A stretch of 63,970 nt of DNA, the filler included, from Polymyxa betae A26-41 (taxonomy: Eukaryota > Protista > Endomyxa: Phytomyxea): the NCBI GenBank assembly GCA_003693705.1. It is 9 parts of 9 records of this genome, joined end to end, with 100 filler letters (N's around TTAATTAATTAA, not from the genome) between each part and the next. Parts side by side here need not be neighbours in the genome. Positions count along the whole stretch, not along the records: positions 37,456 to 47,424 come from RBZT01000193.1; 8 more parts are not named here. One strand, 5' to 3'. Under the pieces are notes generated by a model, which was not told where the DNA came from, did not search any database, and saw only the letters and a program-made list of their open reading frames with translations. The translations under genes and the position numbers were made by a program. Positions 37,456 through 47,524 of the stretch are shown piece by piece. Numbering within the stretch: the stretch's first letter is position 1; each line of letters opens with the position of its first letter.

Positions 37456-37519
<64 letters not shown>

Positions 37520-37553
37520 CCCTAACCCTAACCCTAAAAAACCCAAACCCTAA
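37456..37553 (-). repeat. Telomere repeat tract (mixed TTAGGG/TTTAGGG) at contig start; probable chromosome end
   Basis: (CCCTAA)n interspersed with CCCTAAA, C-strand 5'-terminal as expected for a left chromosome end. Confidence 0.92.
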
Positions 37554-38762
37554 GTCGATGATCATGTCGCCGTATGCGGACGCGTAGTACAGGTCCGCGC
37601 CCTTCACCCGCATCAGCAGACGAGCGATCGCAAATTTCTGTAACACGATCGCCAGCTGTAATAAAGTGCGGTGATGGTCGCGGTCGGCGGCGCCGATGTT
37701 GATGACCGGCTCGGCGATCGACGGACATTCGACAACAAACATGAGCCAGAAATCCGTGGTATCCAGTCCGGTATACAGCAGGTTGGCGACGTACGCGACA
37801 AAAGCGAACGGATCGGCGCGGACCTGTACTCGGAACCGCCGCGTCCGGAACAGGACCGCGACGTGCCCCACCCGGCCACTGGTCACCAGCATCTCCACAA
37901 GTCCGAACATACTGGGCGGGTGCGGACAGCACAGTAACGGGAACAGGACCGGGACCAAGTCCGCAGGGAACTCGACATTATGGGCGAAATCGAGCAGACC
38001 GAACCGAATTCCGACCCGCAGCAGAGCCAGTACGACGCCAGCGTCGTCCAGGACGACGCGGCGTTCGGCCAGCTGCCAGGCCAGGTGCTCGGACATGGCG
38101 AAGTTGTGCGGGAAGACGCGGTCGAACGGGGCCGGGTAACGTGACCGGACTCGAGCCAGGACGTCGTCGGCGTAGCCTTTCGGGTCGGCGAATCGGGCCG
38201 CGTCCGTCCGCAGGAAATCGTGAACGGCCTCCACCATCCACGGCGGCACGCCGGGCGGGACTTCCGCCCCCCGGACGTCCTCGGGCAGACCCAGGACGAC
38301 ATCGATGGCGGCCAGGTCGAAATCCGGGGCCAGTACGACCGCCGCGAACACGTCCCGGGCGACGTCGCGGATCAGCAGGCGCGTGAGTTCGACTTTGGTG
38401 GCCGTGGACAGGGCGCGGGACCGCCCGATCTGGTCGTACACGCCCGCGGCGACCTGCGGGGTCAGGGCCGTGGTGTAACGGCGCGTCAGCGGACTTTGAT
38501 GCAGGAGCCGTGCTAGTTCACGGATGATGGCCGGTAACTGCGTGTCCGGGATGAATGGCGGGAGCAGATCGGGCGAGTACGACAGCTTCTGGATGAGGTA
38601 GGGGGCGCGGCATATCCGGCGCAGGCGGCGGCAGGTCTGAGACAGGCGGGCGAGGTCGGCGAGGGTGCCGAGCAGGTCGACGATCGGCGTGAGGAGATCA
38701 TCGGGGATCTGATCGAGAGGTGGGCCTCCTGCTGCTGGGGCCACCCCCGCCCCTATCTTCAT
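37497..38762 (-). CDS. F-box plus C-terminal ankyrin-like protein, intronless and GC-rich; reading frame ends inside the telomere
   Basis: LDQIPDDLLTPIVDLL...LARLSQTCRRLRRIC (F-box) and TLLQLAI....IARLLM...GAD......G (ankyrin). Strong G/C third-position bias. C-terminal RVRVRV is translated telomere. Confidence 0.82.
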
Positions 38763-38801
38763 GACGGGCGAGGTTCGTCAAGTCCACGACCACACTAGAA
38801 T

Positions 38802-39052
38802 AAGGAGAGGTGGCTGCGCCGCAAATATTTTTCATGTCGATTTGTTTTCAAAACTTTTTTGATGAGATCTGTGATGTTACCATCAAGGATAGGTGGCTGC
38901 GCCGCACATATTTTTTCAAAAAAATGCACAAAATGTTTTTGCTGAGATCTGTGATGTTACCATCAAGGATAGGTGGATGCGCCGCACATATTTTTTCATA
39001 ACGATGCGACGATTTGTTTTCGAAATTTCTTGCTGAGATCTGTGATGTTACC
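38802..39052. repeat. Subtelomeric tandem repeat, about 80-88-bp unit x3
   Basis: aagga(t/g)aggtggctgcgccgca.atatttt...tgagatctgtgatgttacca units start at 38802, 38885 and 38965. Confidence 0.93.
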
Positions 39053-39149
39053 AACAGACTTACAGCAATACTGATTTCTTCATTTTACGGCGCCCCCATC
39101 ATTCATCGAGATCAGCGTCGAAGAATGCAGTCGGCCAGTACGGCTCCTG

Positions 39150-39968
39150 TCACGAACTCGTATGCAACGTTGGAAGCCAGTCGTGAAATCTACGACAATC
39201 TCCGCCTGATATGACAGATGTTGCCCGCTGACCATATCGGCTCCCGCCTTCAGCACGACGCCTCCGACCGCTTCTTGCTGACGGACTTGTTGCGGCCTTC
39301 TCCTCGCGATCTCTATTCAAAACGCATCGACGATTGGTGACATCCTCCGCCGCCTCCTCTCTGGCGAGATTCACGCACTCCATTGCTAAAATTGCTCCGA
39401 TCTCGCCGGCGTCATACTGGAGTGCGTGCTGCCCCAGCGGTCTTATTGTCGCTGCTGGGAATCGGAGTCCGTTTCGATCCCGTCCTTTTGATAATGAGGG
39501 ATCGGCTGACGCAATCGGAGGTCGCGCAAGTTGAACTTTTCCGTACGGAAGATGGGGCCTCAATCTCATTCGTACGAATTTCTCCGACAGGAATACTGCC
39601 CCAAGAGACACGCCTGTCACGGAATTGCAGCAATACACGCTGGGACGAAACTTTTTCTGATGAAATCGAATAAATAGTTTAGAGGCATAACATTGACAGA
39701 TAGGGCGAGAGGGAGGATTTAGTAGATGGGCGACGTGTCCGTACGACATCGTTCGCCGGTGATGGAGGAAAACTCCATCAGGGTCGGACTGGAGGGATCG
39801 CGTCCGCCGCGTCGTTCCAGATCGTCTCGAATGACCTCGAGCAGGGCGTGCATGGCGGCGTTGTCCTCCGAGGTTCGTGACGGCGTCGACAAGTTCTCTG
39901 CAGACCGCGCTGTTGCCGGGGCCGGAGGTAGCCGAGACTTCTTCGAGTGCACGGCTAATAGATGCCAT
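39150..39968 (-). CDS. Hypothetical protein or pseudogene
   Basis: Long GC-rich ORF from MASISRALEEVSA; no recognisable domain, possibly frameshifted or spliced. Confidence 0.3.
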   Translation of the reverse strand: MASISRALEEVSATSGPGNSAVCRELVDAVTNLGGQRRHARPARGHSRRSGTTRRTRSLQSDPDGVFLHHRRTMSYGHVAHLLNPPSRPICQCYASKLFIRFHQKKFRPSVYCCNSVTGVSLGAVFLSEKFVRMRLRPHLPYGKVQLARPPIASADPSLSKGRDRNGLRFPAATIRPLGQHALQYDAGEIGAILAMECVNLAREEAAEDVTNRRCVLNRDREEKAATSPSARSGRRRRAEGGSRYGQRATSVISGGDCRRFHDWLPTLHTSS

Positions 39969-40574
39969 CAAGTCAGTGAAAGAGAACAAACAAACCCTAA
40001 ACCCTAAGATCTGAATATCGATGACGCTAACAACGAGAAACTGAGTGATTTTGTCGCTGTGAAAAAACTTGCAAAGCAAAAAGAATAACGACAGAAAAAA
40101 CGTCGGAATGAAACTTCTTGAAAAAAAAAAAGTGAAAGCTTTTACCTTGTGAGGCGAGGTCAAAAGTGCACTCGGCAGCCGGGAATGCAATATTCACAGC
40201 ACGGACAAGTTCGTGAATGTCGACTTCATGTCCAGCTGACCTGCATCAATCCGATCAGAACGAATCGAAGAAACATTTTGTGAGACAAAATCCATAAATG
40301 TTCATAAAGGTAAACAGAGTGGATCGAGAGAAAACGGCGTCAAATTGAACCAACATCAGCAGCTGTGTCTGAATCCATTCTGACGCTATGAACTTAAAAT
40401 ATGGCATCATCGAACGTGGAAAAAACGCAACAAAACTGTCAGAAAGGGAATACAGGAATTTCGGAAGTCTTCGTGATCAAATTGAGAAAAGGATCGAATC
40501 AGTTGCCATAGTAAGAACGCTCACAAAACGCCCTCTGAGAGAAATCAGTCTGGACAAAGTTCAGCAGACTGAAC

Positions 40575-41312
40575 TCATCCCAAAAGCAAAGCAGCGAAAC
40601 ATCGAAAACGGGAAAACGCGCAACCCAGTACGACGGACTCGTAGCCGCGCTTGAAGTTGAGAATGAAGCGCGAGAGGGCGTTGCGCTCGGGAGTGCGCTG
40701 GTTCGGGCGAATATCGGCGAACAGGCGCCGGTGATCGGGCGTCCCGGGCTGCGTCCGGCGCCAGAATTTCGGCTTCCAGTACCGATCGGCGTGCAGGACG
40801 TGGCCGGCATCCAGCCGGTGGGCCGGTACGAGCGCCCGCAGGGCGCCGTCGCTGCCGGATTCCGGCTCCGACGATCGTTTTAGGCGCATGCGCAGACCGA
40901 CGTCATCGTCGAAGGTCGCCATCTTGCTCGCGCGCGATCTCGAGACAGCCTTGGTGAAGGGGGGCGTGGTCCAGTACGACTCCGCGTCCGAATCTCACTC
41001 TGTTAACAGAGCAGTCGCGACGCTAAAGACGATTAGTGATCGTCGAAACCCGGGTGGTAAAAAAAGATCGCGGGGCCGTACCCGCCCCAGGGCCCCCTGT
41101 AGATTTCTGACTAATGAGGCGCCGGTCACAGGAACGCGAAACCCCCGGGCTGAGAGCGACCAGAATGCGGCGGTGACGGTTGTGACGGTCTCGGCTCGGT
41201 GCCTCCGATGAGGTTCATCCATCTCGAAGGGAGGCCGCTCGTCATAATTAGATCGAGGGCGCGATCCTGCTTTAGGCCAGTATTCCGTCAGGGTCGGGGT
41301 CTGCTGAGGCAT
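40575..41312 (-). pseudogene. Internally deleted piggyBac-like transposase remnant
   Basis: Two in-frame ORFs separated by one TGA (40995). ESYWTTPPFTKAVSRSR resembles YWS..F...MSRxRF, LDAGHVLHADRYW resembles GHHLYxDNYY, and KFWRR resembles KWWRR. Confidence 0.5.
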
Positions 41313-41889
41313 ACGAGCGACTATCTTAAGAAAATACTATAATTAACGATATAGTTGATGTGGCTGAGACAGAAATTTAGCAGAATCTTACAGTTGGCAG
41401 AGAGAAAATCTAAATAATTGTGAAGAGGATTTTCATATTACAAAATACGAAAATGAAAAATGTTATGATGAAACTATCTGATGATTTACACGGGCGAATA
41501 TCGTGGACGGAGTCGATACAGATTTATATTTGAAGATTTACAACGCCGCAGCTAAGAATATATTGATAATGAGCAATGCTAATAAACAGCATATTTACAC
41601 CTAAAAATCCAGAATGTCAGTTTTTACCCAAAGAAACACCACCAGTTCAAGAGGCCGCTTCAAACTGGATTGCAAAACGCCAATCATTAAATTGACAAGA
41701 GAATCAAATAGCACAAAACAAACCGGATCCGGAATGTCAGCATTTAACTGATAAAATATCGCTAAAGTTAAAGAAAATCGCTCGAAATGACTTAGCCAAA
41801 AAAAGGAGGAGAATTATGACAAAAAAAACCAAAGAGCACAAAAATAATCCGTAAGTTGAGATGAAAGTTTTGCCAATCCTCCATAAACC

Positions 41890-42090
41890 CTAACACGAGA
41901 CCTTGAATCCCTCTTTTCGAAGACAATCGAGATGAGCCTCGATGAAAGCTCGGCATTGGTCCTCGCCGTTCGCCAGCACGCATTCGTCCCTGTCTTTACG
42001 CGTCTGGGGACAAGCGCAGCAAATCTTCTTAGCAGGCGCCTTGGCCGGCTCGCCCACGGTCTTAGCAGCGGCTTCGATCTTGCCCGACAT
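41890..42090 (-). CDS. COX17: Cytochrome c oxidase copper chaperone
   Basis: KKICCACPQTRKDRDEC...GEDQCRAFIEAHLDCLRKEGFKV: CCxC copper site and twin Cx9C. Confidence 0.95.
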   Translation of the reverse strand: MSGKIEAAAKTVGEPAKAPAKKICCACPQTRKDRDECVLANGEDQCRAFIEAHLDCLRKEGFKVSC

Positions 42091-42972
42091 TTTGGCAATG
42101 ACGACGACGCTCCCTGCTTGGATAATGTGCGTGACTGGCAATCTGAGAGGAGGTGCGAAAATGTGCGCAGGTTGGGCATTTTTTTACTCCTACATGATTC
42201 TGTTTTTGAGAAATGAAAGATGCGTGGTGGTGCGCAATGCGCGAAAGTGGCGCATTGTACTGCTCACATGATTTTTTCTCAAAAGAAGATGCGTCAAAGA
42301 TCAGTCGATTCGACTTCACACTATACCAATAAATGGTCGCCGCCACCTGTCGGATCTATCTCACGACAGAAAGCACTAAATCAGTACAGATTATTGACCA
42401 GACACTTTCTGTATGTAATCTTACATTCAGACTCTTTATATAATTGGGCTCTGTAACAATGGGCTTATAATTAGAACTTCGAAAACTTTACAAATGTTGA
42501 AGAAATTTCACTTTTCAGATTTCAAATTAATAATCTGCTCTGTCCACCATCAGACCTGAATCATGGATAAAATTGAACTGAGATATTCTTCGAGATTGAT
42601 TTTGGATATAACAATCAGATATGAAGCTCATTCAAATAGGGCAAATTTTGTATTGATTCCGCATATAAGATGATCGGTGTCAGTGCGGTTTGCGGAGACC
42701 ATCCTGGTTCATGTCCAGGGCAGTGACACGGGCCAGTACGCCACCGTTGAGATGCCATTGTCCGACGCCGACCGCATCGTTCTGAAATCGCCGCAGATCA
42801 AGAGTGCACTCTCTGCGTTGCGGACGTTGACAGCCTTATCCCGAGCCCGAAGCCCTCATCATGTAATGTTACACAACACCAATAGATTCCTTCATCTCTG
42901 TCAACCTTTCAACTTGTTTTTTTTTTCTGTTTTTTTGTCTTGCCACTGCATATTGTGTCAAAATCGTGCGGA

Positions 42973-43132
42973 GATTTTCTCATGTATTTGTCAGCAGCCT
43001 GCTTCCGGGTCCGATTCTGGCACTGTTTATCATTGAGGGCGGCCGATTCGGTGATTTTCTCGTGTATTTGTCAGCAGCCTGCTTCCGGGTCCGATTCTGG
43101 CACTGTTTATCATTGAGGGCGGCCGATTCGGT
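42973..43132. repeat. Tandem duplication, 80-bp unit x2
   Basis: gattttctc(a/g)tgtatttgtcagcagcctgcttccgggtccgattctggcactg...ccgattcggt occurs twice. Confidence 0.95.
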
Positions 43133-46100
43133 AACATCGAATGAGGTCGTTCTAATACACTCGAGTTTGATCCCATCTATGTTTTCGATTGTGAATAACT
43201 ATTGCAGCAAAATCTGTTGAAAACTATCGGGGCATTAACAGATGCAGTGATCTGCTAGTTTACAGGAGAAATTCTGCCAAAAGGTTCAGCATAACAATCT
43301 CAAAGATCAATATTGATATGGTCTTGAATATCTAATTTGATTTCAGGTGTTTCGAACCGATACGAAAACGCTCTTCTCGATGATCACGTCAACGATGCTT
43401 TTATTATGTGGAGTCGAGGATGACATTTATAGATAGTAGTCGGGCTGCATTACCTGGTTGGAAAACTTTCGCTATTTCTGACCTGAGATGTTAAGAGGGG
43501 TGGGTTTAGGGTTTTAATCACCTGACATTATAAATTCGCGACTTTATGTGACAAACACGTATTCAACGACTGAGATGTCTTTCGATCTGGAGGAAACGAT
43601 AACATTTGAGGCGTTGCCGGCCATGGCTCATCATTGCGATTCTTGTATCAGGAGCGAATCCGATCAGCAAGGAAAATGCAGGCCCAGAGCGGGATCAGAA
43701 CGAGGCCAACTTCTTTGGATATCATGTGACGTGATAGTAAAGGAGTTATCACACCAATCACAGGCTCAAACAGAGCCTCAATAAAGAACAAAACCTGCTC
43801 GAGGCAGGCAGCCCTGATCACCAATCAGGCTGTTGAAAGATTCGATATCGACAAGGACCCGAAACATGCAACATGAACCGATGATATCAAGAGTGAAACA
43901 TTGCAATGTACTGTACGTACCATGTTTGCAAAAAGACCCAACGAAAGTCCGGTCAGAATTCGGAGAAATCCGAACACCCCATGTCGACACCTCCCCCGAC
44001 ATTCGATATTTTCTGCAAAATCCAAAGCGGGCAGATCACGAATGGAATGGGCATCATCAACAAGTACCAGATGGAGGTGCAGCACCCAGCGTCCGGCTAC
44101 AGATCAGCAGTCAAAAATATCACGAACAAGTACGAAAAGAGAGGAATTGAGACAGAACAGTCAGCAAAGAACAGCGCTGAATGAGTTGAATTACAAAAAA
44201 AAATGAGAACAAAAAAACTTAGCACAAAGTGAGAGTCGATCCCAGGCACTGACCGCGACCATATCGGTCTCGCTCTTATTCTTACGGTCGAGCAGGGTCC
44301 AAACCATACGACTAAGTTTGACAGCAAACACGACGGCAACAGCAGTAACGAGACCCGATTGGGCACCAAGAGAGAGCTGAGTATCAGCTACAGCCGAGGC
44401 AGGCGACATCGAAGGGCTCGGCGAAACATCTCCGAGCAGATAGCGGCCCGCTCTGCAACAGTTCCGAGTCAGATGAAAACGGGGGGCGGTACGGCGTCCC
44501 AATAGATCCGCCGTCCGGCTTCATTCGCTGTGCTTGATGAGTTGCTTCTTGTAGGGGATCTTCATACTTCATTATCACTGGTATCATCACGCCTCAGATA
44601 GCCTGTTGTATCCTTGCACTTACAAAATCCACACCTTGCAGCCGTAAAAAAAACGAAATCGATCGTAATGGCGACATCAATGAGAGAGAGCGCCTTCAGT
44701 CTTATCATGCAGCGAAAAGATTCTCTTCCAACAAGCAGCAATCGGAATTCGTCAACACCTTAGATGGATGGTTTGCGATTGTTGCTGATTACAGAAACCA
44801 AGACCTAACTATGAGCTGAGGAACGAGAAAAAGACGATCTGTGATTCGCTGAAATTTGCCGCGAAGAAGCTTGGCGATCTTGGTATACTGTCGACCCAGG
44901 CACGGCTCGAAAAACGAATGGATCCAGCTTATTGCAGAGAGAAATCTGTTCCTTCTGGGGGAGATCAAAGGCGATGAACGACTTGAAATAGAGCAAATAA
45001 TCGTTAAATATTCTTAATACGTTATTTCTATCATCGTGAATTTCTGCCCGCTAGAACATGGTTATCGCATCTTCATTTCTGCTTATTCAAACTGTGTGGA
45101 CAATCGGATCAGATCTCGCATTCCTGTATTGATTTGTTACGTTGAATAATGAGAATAGCTTGAATCGCATTCTCGAGAATCTGGAGGACGGCGGCACCCA
45201 AGGCTGATTCAATTTCGAATTCCTGTCCTCTATCATACCTGCTGGGAATGCCAATACAGAATAGGGTTTTAGGGTTCCGTGCGTATATAGTTGTGATTGA
45301 GAGTCAGATACGATCCGAATTACAGCAGATTGATTTCTGATTTCGCTCTCAGAAAATATAACGAAATCTCTTCGCTTCACGAAAGCAGGACCTTGGACCA
45401 GGCGTTTATATCATATCAATGATTTTTGTGCTGATCTAATATCTATCATACAGCTGTTAAAGATGTTCGAATCTGAAAGAACAGAACCCAGGCAGATCGG
45501 ATTTCAAGATGCATCATCTTGTTTGGAAGCAACGATAGCACACATATGGAGCCGCCAGAAGACAAGGCCTTTGCTTTCGAAGCCAACTGGAATGATTGAA
45601 ATTGTAACTGGGAATGAGATAACATCTGATGCTTCTATAACGAGCTCAAACAGTGGACAGCTAATTGGGGCATCAAGATACCAGCTAAAGGCGGCTCCGA
45701 AAGAAGAGCGTTGGACTGGTGGATCATTCGAGAAGAACCCTGAACCCTAACGATCACCTGACAGCGATCAGGCTGCCTCCGGGACTGACAGTCTCAGGAA
45801 ACGTCAACGCAGTTTTTGATACATTAGACAGTTTTCGCAACATCGTTCATACAGTACATAGAAATAATACATAGATTCTCGGCACACAGACTTCCAGGCA
45901 CAGTTTGGCAGGCCGCGTCTATAGATGGATTCTGTATCTGAACACAGTCTTCCAGAAATCCGGTAAATATTTTCAAGCACGCGTGCCTGAAGCACGCGCA
46001 GCCCACCGCGCAGTTTTTATTTCACAGTCGCGCAGTAAACAATTGTTTGACGATGTTATAATCGTAACTCAGGGCTCAGGCACTTAGATAGTCTGTCATC

Positions 46101-46231
46101 TGTTCGTCCCAAGTGTAGTGTTATTGGACTCTACTTACGTTTACTGGCAAACAGGCGCTCATCGTTACTTCTATGAGGCGTTTGGATATCCTTTCTAAGA
46201 GTGTCCGCTGGCGATTGGGGACTGGGCACAT

Positions 46232-46872
46232 CAGGGATGCCGAAATTTTGTTTCTGGGAACTGCTTCAGGAATAATTTATTCCTCTCAGTTTGCTGCGGA
46301 ATAGAATTATTCCACATGTGCTGCCTTCGGAAATTACGTACTGAGAATAAAATACATAAGTCTGGAATAAAGAATAAATATTCCAATTCCCGTAAAAAAA
46401 CAGTGGCATTTTCATAGCAGGTACAGTAAGCCTTCGCTTAAGTCCGCANNNNNNNNNNNNNNNNNNNNNNNNNNNNNNNNNNNNNNNNNNNNNNNNNNNN
46501 NNNNNNNNNNNNNNNNNNNNNNNNNCGGACTTAAGCGAAGGCTTACAGTATTTGAAACGACCTAAAACTCCGAATTCGTCTCGTTCCCACCAGTAGGCAG
46601 TAACGTGTGTGAAAGGGTTGTATATATGGCCAAATAGGCATTGCTAGATTACTTGAACATCAGAAGCGAGATGTTTCTATTTGTTCTTGTCACGAAACAA
46701 TGTTTGAATTTATTCCTCTCTAAAAATAAACAATTTTATTCCTTCCCCCCAGGATTAGGCTCGGAATAACATATTAAATAAACAATTTTATTCCTTCCCC
46801 CCAGGATTAGGCTCGGAATAACATATTTTGATGAATTTTTCCTGAAAGTGAATTATGTATTCGGCATCTCTG
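46232..46872. mobile_element. Non-autonomous hAT-like element (13-bp TIR) containing a nested MITE and a 52-bp tandem duplication (46724-46827)
   Basis: cagggatgccgaa ... ttcggcatctctg termini and repeated GGAATAA/TTATTCC subterminal motifs; no clear TSD. Confidence 0.5.
46424..46548. mobile_element. Tc1/mariner(pogo)-type MITE spanning an N gap
   Basis: TA|cagtaagccttcgcttaagtccg ... cggacttaagcgaaggcttacag|TA (23-bp TIR, one mismatch, TA TSD). Confidence 0.8.
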
Positions 46873-47524
46873 GCGCTGTGGAGAGATTCCCTGTTGGAGT
46901 TTAGCATTTTTCATAATGAACATACAATGCAACCGCGAATCATGCCTTTTTTTGTAAGCAATCGTACCTTGAATTGGTTGTTTCCATGTGCTATTTGTGA
47001 TTTTATTTTTAATGATGCGATTTGAACTAAAAGCTGACTCCTGCAGATGGTAATAAACTTGCTCGGTAAAAATTTGCACACATGCTATGAGCGCTATCTA
47101 CCCTAGATCACAATAATAAATGAAGATAATGGATAGGGAACCCAGCACAGAAACATCGAATTCGAAGTGCCAGAGGCACGCATGCACCCACAGTCAAACA
47201 ATAGTTTCTGCGCGACTGTGAAATTAAAACTGCGGAGGAGGCTGCGCGTGCTTCAGCAGAAATCTGTATATCCTATATTTAAATATACAGATGCTCATCA
47301 CAGAGTGTTTCTTCATTCTCAGGGCTACGCAAAGGAACGAACATCGACCTAGATTTACATTTGCTCTTATTAATAGTTACACAAACGATATTATTTATTT
47401 GTTGTTTAGACATGCGCTCTGGCGNNNNNNNNNNNNNNNNNNNNNNNNNNNNNNNNNNNNNNNNNNNNTTAATTAATTAANNNNNNNNNNNNNNNNNNNN
47501 NNNNNNNNNNNNNNNNNNNNNNNN

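What the first reader, a model, noticed from the sequence alone, without database searches (positions are those of the whole stretch)
37456..38762. F-box/ankyrin gene whose C-terminus and stop codon are supplied by the telomere
Seen: the frame runs ...GDMIIDLGFGFFRVRVRVRVRVRV-stop. The coding sequence GAC-TTA-GGG contains a TTAGGG seed, followed by degenerate and then perfect repeats, and the TAG arises at the first 7-mer TTTAGGG. The break falls at the end of a single ankyrin repeat. Inference: de novo telomere addition (chromosome healing) truncated an ankyrin array, so protein length now depends on telomere repeat composition and the gene has no 3' UTR. It may be subject to telomere position effect or yield TERRA-like mRNA.
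Basis: partly seen in the sequence, partly recalled or inferred. Interest (0 to 1): 0.8.

Follow-up and report, generated by a model that had tools for sequence, protein, structure and literature searches.

The report
Gene cut off by telomere repeats
A protist gene for a protein-degradation adaptor runs straight into telomere-like repeats that supply its last 18 amino acids and its stop codon, most likely because the chromosome broke inside the gene and was capped with a new telomere, a known kind of accident and not a new mechanism.

Summary
An intronless 421-codon ORF (38762-37497, minus strand) stays coding-like (GC3 about 0.8) to codon 403, then enters a 98-bp tract of mixed 6- and 7-base telomere-type repeats at the piece's edge. 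The tract encodes LGFGFF(RV)6 and the stop, which falls at the first 7-base unit. The F-box is solid (Pfam 4e-8). The ankyrin is one sub-threshold match, and no relative shows a longer ankyrin array, so 'truncated ankyrin array' is unsupported. A native telomere seed cannot be shown from one sequence. The tail is what chance gives: simulated random healing yields a median 7 residues, 18 or more in 20%, and an RV run in 41%. Three distant relatives were found, the best on a short contig of the sugar-beet assembly; with GC and gene style this hints at a plasmodiophorid-like protist (inferred only). Main rival: telomere-like words are about 40-fold enriched inside this piece, so the tract may be interstitial or intronic at a contig break. 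No reads could be examined. Telomere capping inside ORFs is known (Magnaporthe TLH; healing mechanism in Plasmodium). One extra lead: a 16-bp inverted copy 33 bp from the junction. Verdict: real, most likely ordinary terminal truncation; interest 0.3.

The parts
37497..38762 (-). Intronless ORF, 421 aa plus stop; F-box protein with a helical core and one ankyrin-like repeat; 65.5% GC in its unique part
38583..38714 (-). F-box domain (residues 17-60)
   Evidence: Pfam PF12937 33.3 bits, E 4e-8, above cut-off 24.3; PF00646 23.5 bits above 20.5
37929..38618 (-). Helical core (residues 49-278) shared at 29-35% identity with three database fragments; no Pfam family
37590..37676 (-). Single ankyrin-like repeat (residues 363-391), below Pfam's cut-off
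   Evidence: Atlas feature neighbours are ankyrin clusters at 0.93-0.95 but with low recognition value
37456..37553 (-). Telomere-type tract, 15 units (ten 6-mers, three 7-mers, two irregular proximal units), G-strand pointing to the edge of the piece
37497..37553 (-). Tract-encoded codons 404-421 (18 aa) and the TAG stop at 37499-37497, formed at the first regular 7-mer
37586..37601 (.). Arm 1 of a perfect 16-bp inverted repeat, 33 bp inside the junction
   Evidence: (I8)
37815..37830 (.). Arm 2 of the same 16-bp inverted repeat, 213 bp from arm 1, within codons 311-316
   Evidence: (I8)
38802..39056 (.). About three diverged copies of an 80-bp unit directly upstream of the start codon
   Evidence: D2-D4

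Best explanation
A real chromosome end formed by terminal truncation. The chromosome broke or was resected inside the 3' part of a subtelomeric, intronless F-box gene, and telomerase added new repeats (first irregular units, then regular 6- and 7-base ones). The gene points toward the end, so its frame reads on into the repeats. In a 6-mer tract two of three frames are open (Leu-Gly or Arg-Val), and each 7-mer shifts the frame, so a stop appears within a few units. The 18-residue tail and the stop are by-products. The allele is probably a truncated, weakly functional or dead copy without a normal 3' UTR. Shown: the anatomy, the F-box, coding-like composition up to the junction, the chance nature of the tail. 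Inferred: that the tract is terminal, that telomerase made it, that coding sequence was lost, and that the intact product was an SCF substrate adaptor.
For: Orientation and position at the piece's edge, 15 units against at most 2 units for internal words. GC3 0.74-0.92 in every 50-codon block up to codon 400, with no stop or frameshift before the junction. Irregular proximal units. Simulation: median tail 7 aa, 18 or more in 20%, an RV run in 41%, a stop within 60 codons in 99.8% at the observed 7-mer share. Tandem 80-bp repeats upstream, as often seen in subtelomeres (established knowledge). Precedent: Magnaporthe subtelomere 1 is truncated within the TLH ORF and de novo truncations arise in culture (PMC1635262); resection to telomerase-RNA homology then repeat addition in Plasmodium (PMC6532940).
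Against: Only 98 bp of tract is assembled. Internal telomere-like 8-mers occur 6 times against 0.14 expected, so this genome makes interstitial words. No relative covers residues 279-403, so loss of coding sequence is not shown directly. The organism and its true telomere unit are unknown; P. brassicae has an 8-base unit (PMC6823432), unlike this tract.
Confidence: 0.6

Rival explanations
1. The tract is interstitial, for example a telomere-like run in an intron or inserted at a repaired break. The short-read contig simply stops in it and the gene continues beyond. The repeat-encoded tail would then be an unspliced read-through that is never translated.
For: Five internal sites of telomere-like words, on both strands, four of them in about 41% GC stretches; one lies just upstream of a branch-like CTGAC and an AG (intron position inferred). 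Every repeat unit holds a GT in a donor-like context, and there are further GTs at 37607, 37590 and 37581. The scaffold has a 77-N gap flanked by inverted arms, so the assembly does break at repeats.
Against: Internal words are 8-16 bases (at most 2 units) against at least 98 bases here. The first 403 codons have no intron. Orientation fits a telomere (a 50% coincidence otherwise).
Confidence: 0.22
2. An old, fixed arrangement: the gene is expressed and its product carries the telomere-encoded basic tail as its normal C-terminus, from an mRNA that ends in telomeric repeats.
For: The ORF is undamaged for 403 codons with strong GC3 bias; F-box intact. VR dipeptide repeats bind nucleic acids (PMC9992779), so a tail could act as a nuclear or nucleic-acid-binding tag.
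Against: An intact frame is equally expected after a recent break. The tail's length and make-up match the chance model. Only six RV pairs. No conservation, expression or second isolate seen.
Confidence: 0.1
3. Assembly or library chimera joining the gene to telomeric reads, possibly with a fold-back artefact.
For: Fragmented short-read assembly with a gap and exact tandem duplicates (52 bp at 46724-46827). A 16-bp inverted copy near the junction could be a fold-back artefact.
Against: Irregular proximal units are junction-specific and are not expected from a join through a shared hexamer; correct orientation.
Confidence: 0.08

Closest known systems
Terminal truncation within the TLH helicase ORF at Magnaporthe oryzae subtelomere 1 (PMC1635262)
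   Same: Telomere repeats directly cap a broken coding sequence of a subtelomeric gene.
   Different: Here the gene is an F-box protein, the repeats are mixed 6/7-mers, and the terminal position is not proven.
Telomere healing in Plasmodium falciparum subtelomeres (PMC6532940)
   Same: Proposed mechanism: break, resection, telomerase priming on short homology, repeat addition.
   Different: There the original sequence is known, so the seed can be shown; here no intact allele is available.
Avr-Pita of M. oryzae, 3' UTR ending 48 bp from the telomere (PMC1635262)
   Same: Gene at the very tip, exposed to truncation.
   Different: Avr-Pita has its own stop and 3' UTR and is secreted; this ORF has neither, and no hydrophobic signal-like N-terminus.
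TERRA-derived VR and GL dipeptide repeat proteins (PMC9992779)
   Same: The same two open frames of the 6-mer repeat; the tail is a short VR run preceded by Leu-Gly.
   Different: Those are long products of non-AUG translation in mammals; this would be six pairs fused to an AUG-initiated protein, and expression is untested.
F-box plus ankyrin proteins (Legionella AnkB, giant-virus and poxvirus F-box/ankyrin proteins, from my own knowledge) and plasmodiophorid ankyrin proteins, some with SKP1/BTB domains (PMC12503489)
   Same: An SCF-linking module combined with an ankyrin-like segment; predicted substrate-adaptor role.
   Different: Only one sub-threshold ankyrin repeat, a 230-residue helical core of no known family between the domains, no signal peptide, no sequence match to named members.

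Membership tests
Healed chromosome end (de novo telomere addition) | G-rich repeat strand runs 5'->3' toward the end, joined directly to unique sequence | tested here: met
Healed chromosome end (de novo telomere addition) | The tract is terminal (no unique DNA beyond) | not testable with these tools
Healed chromosome end (de novo telomere addition) | An intact allele or paralogue continues past the junction | tested here: inconclusive
   three relatives cover residues 49-278 only; none in metagenome or viral scans
Healed chromosome end (de novo telomere addition) | Short native homology to the telomerase template at the junction | tested here: inconclusive
   first hexamer may be native or added; codon use does not decide
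Healed chromosome end (de novo telomere addition) | Repeat unit equals the organism's telomere unit | not testable with these tools
   organism unidentified; no other contig ends available
F-box proteins | N-terminal F-box above Pfam's cut-off | tested here: met
   PF12937 33.3 bits against 24.3; PF00646 23.5 against 20.5
F-box proteins | Binds Skp1 | not testable with these tools
   needs an interaction assay
Ankyrin-repeat proteins | Two or more tandem ankyrin repeats above cut-off | tested here: not met
   one repeat at 13-16.7 bits against 22.3; no ankyrin structure in PDB sequence search; models too poor there (pLDDT under 50)
Secreted plasmodiophorid ankyrin effectors | N-terminal signal peptide | tested here: not met
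   F-box starts at residue 16-17; best hydropathy 9-mer in the first 30 residues is 1.5 (a rough check, not a signal-peptide predictor)
TERRA-derived VR dipeptide proteins | Transcription and translation of the telomeric repeats | not testable with these tools
   no RNA reads or proteomics

The most novel reading that the evidence does not exclude
A fixed, expressed gene whose normal stop codon and basic Arg-Val tail are written by telomerase: an AUG-initiated mRNA that is also a TERRA-like RNA, so that the telomere's proximal repeat pattern sets the C-terminus of an SCF adaptor; possibly formed by fold-back templated repair followed by telomere addition.
Probability: 0.1. Interest if true: 0.65.

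Novelty: new member of a known kind. Interest (0 to 1): 0.3.

Why it matters
As a healed truncation it is a routine sign of subtelomere turnover. It has modest value as a record of a mixed 6/7-base telomere-type repeat and of a small unnamed F-box family in a poorly sampled protist lineage. It would matter more only if the allele is fixed and translated, because it would then be a natural gene that gets its stop codon and a VR tail from the telomere, a direct test case for translation of telomeric repeats.

Tried and rejected
Word search with the ORF: nothing; with the four-sequence profile: only the known hit. Exact look-ups of four window proteins: absent. Metagenome and viral scans with the profile: nothing, so viral origin is unsupported. 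COX17 relatives share no neighbouring gene with the piece and name no organism. AlphaFold models were poor (mean pLDDT 39.5 and 50.0) and fold searches gave nothing. Rfam: nothing. Other frames of the piece have no Pfam family. An apparent 8-base extension of the inverted repeat was rejected: that word occurs four times in the piece. One search included two tract codons in the 'unique' part; the simulation was repeated correctly. Papers did not confirm that the sugar-beet contig is Polymyxa; that link is from my memory. Spliced models of the neighbouring genes were not joined. The missing 3' end was not reconstructed.

Full report
Observation. The piece (37456-47424, 48% GC, 45.7% outside the ORF and tract, one 77-N gap) begins with 98 bases of telomere-type repeats, C-rich on the plus strand. 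One open frame on the minus strand runs from ATG 38762 to TAG 37499-37497, 421 aa. Unique sequence ends at codon 403. The next 18 codons, LGFGFF followed by six RV pairs, and the stop lie in the tract. The tract has 15 units: ten 6-mers, three 7-mers and two irregular units next to the junction. The stop arises at the first regular 7-mer and 41 bases of repeats follow, so it is not an effect of the linker.

The gene. The frame is coding-like throughout: GC3 is 0.74-0.92 in each 50-codon block to codon 400, and it is the only long open frame there. The F-box at residues 17-60 passes Pfam's cut-offs. The ankyrin is a single match below cut-off (13 bits, E 0.17; 16.7 bits on a trimmed piece; cut-off 22.3). 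A PDB sequence search finds no ankyrin repeat; language-model neighbours are ankyrin clusters, but with a low recognition value. Models are too poor to judge the C-terminal third. There is no hydrophobic signal-like start. From established knowledge an N-terminal F-box with a C-terminal interaction region is an SCF substrate adaptor; that function is inferred.

Relatives. The exhaustive search found three fragments at 29-35% identity covering residues 49-278. The best is KMS85982.1, a partial protein on a 702-bp, 51% GC contig of the sugar-beet assembly; the other two are 1.2-kb JGI contigs. One ends in a stop at about query residue 312, 37 bases before its contig ends; the other continues about 700 bases past the shared part with no match to the ankyrin-like region. 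So no relative shows a longer ankyrin array, and none shows what lay past codon 403. I recall that such short beet contigs are often Polymyxa contamination, but the papers I could search did not confirm it. The 45.7% GC outside the ORF resembles Polymyxa betae (45.1%) and Spongospora (45.7%) (PMC6328671). A plasmodiophorid-like protist is therefore a guess; P. brassicae itself has an 8-base telomere unit and 58.5% GC and does not fit.

Is the tail special? No. In a 6-mer tract two frames are open (Leu-Gly, Arg-Val) and one is closed; every 7-mer moves the frame. Capping this ORF at random places with a tract of the observed composition gives a median tail of 7 residues, 18 or more in 20%, an RV run in 41% and a stop within 60 codons in 99.8%. 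A telomere-supplied stop is the expected result of any sense-oriented truncation in this genome. The stop lies 54 bases into the tract, in the proximal part that is usually stable (established knowledge), so length variation between cells is unlikely.

Is the tract a telomere? For: orientation, edge position, irregular proximal units, length of at least 15 units, and tandem 80-bp repeats upstream of the gene. Against: the telomere-like 8-mer occurs six times inside the piece against 0.14 expected (0 of 500 shuffles), at five sites on both strands, mostly in low-GC stretches that look intronic or untranslated (inferred, not checked with RNA). One of them forms the stop of the unspliced COX17 frame. 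These words are at most two units long, so the terminal tract is of another size class, but a longer interstitial run at a contig break is not excluded, and each unit holds a donor-like GT.

An extra feature. A perfect 16-bp inverted repeat links 37586-37601, 33 bases inside the junction, with 37815-37830. No synonymous shuffle and 1 of 1000 codon shuffles reach 16 bases; the gapped score gives p about 0.003 for the tail and at most 0.02 gene-wide. It fits a short fold-back templated insertion at a broken end, known from end-joining repair (own knowledge), but it was found after the fact, and arm 1 encodes the Gly-Ala-Asp motif that fits the ankyrin consensus, which argues that it is native. 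It is a lead only.

Mechanism and comparison. Most likely (0.6) the chromosome was truncated inside the gene and healed by telomerase, as described for Plasmodium (PMC6532940) and seen inside the TLH ORF of Magnaporthe (PMC1635262). Rivals: interstitial or intronic tract with a contig break (0.22), fixed and expressed telomere-ended gene (0.10), chimera (0.08). The tail uses the same frames as the TERRA-derived VR and GL peptides (PMC9992779), but nothing here shows transcription or translation. Two literature searches for a closer precedent returned nothing, which says little given the narrow terms.

Verdict. Real feature, correctly read, most likely an ordinary terminal truncation; new member of a known kind; interest 0.3. 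Spliced models of neighbouring genes were not joined, and the missing end of the gene was not reconstructed.

Noticed in passing
window 39992-40007, 41885-41893, 43501-43515, 45262-45276, 45737-45750: Short telomere-like words on both strands, about 40-fold above shuffles (6 against 0.14 for the 8-mer), mostly in low-GC stretches that look intronic or untranslated; may be telo-box-like motifs of this genome.
   Followed up: partly
window 41890-42090 (minus): COX17 gene (Pfam E 3e-19). Its unspliced frame also stops at a TAG inside one of the telomere-like words (41885-41893); an intron there is possible.
   Followed up: partly
window 37586-37601 and 37815-37830: Perfect 16-bp inverted repeat inside the ORF, one arm 33 bp from the junction; p about 0.001-0.02 depending on the null.
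   Followed up: partly
window 46422-46550: About 25-bp inverted arms on either side of the 77-N gap, with TA outside each arm: looks like the ends of a Tc1/mariner-type element whose middle was not assembled, or a scaffolding artefact.
   Followed up: no
window 45987-46038 and 47205-47256: 52-bp inverted arms (88%) 1166 bp apart, enclosing the gap; possible non-autonomous DNA transposon.
   Followed up: no
window 38802-39056, 42969-43132, 46724-46827: Tandem duplications of 80, 80 and 52 bp; the last is exact and may be an assembly overlap; the first lies directly upstream of the F-box gene.
   Followed up: no
window 39150-40922 (minus): A probable multi-exon gene (first exon 40922-40578 has GC3 0.79) with no Pfam or convincing Atlas match.
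   Followed up: partly
L003:1-702: The best relative is annotated as a sugar-beet protein (KMS85982.1) but sits on a 702-bp wholly coding contig with no plant relatives in the search; probably a contaminant of that assembly.
   Followed up: partly
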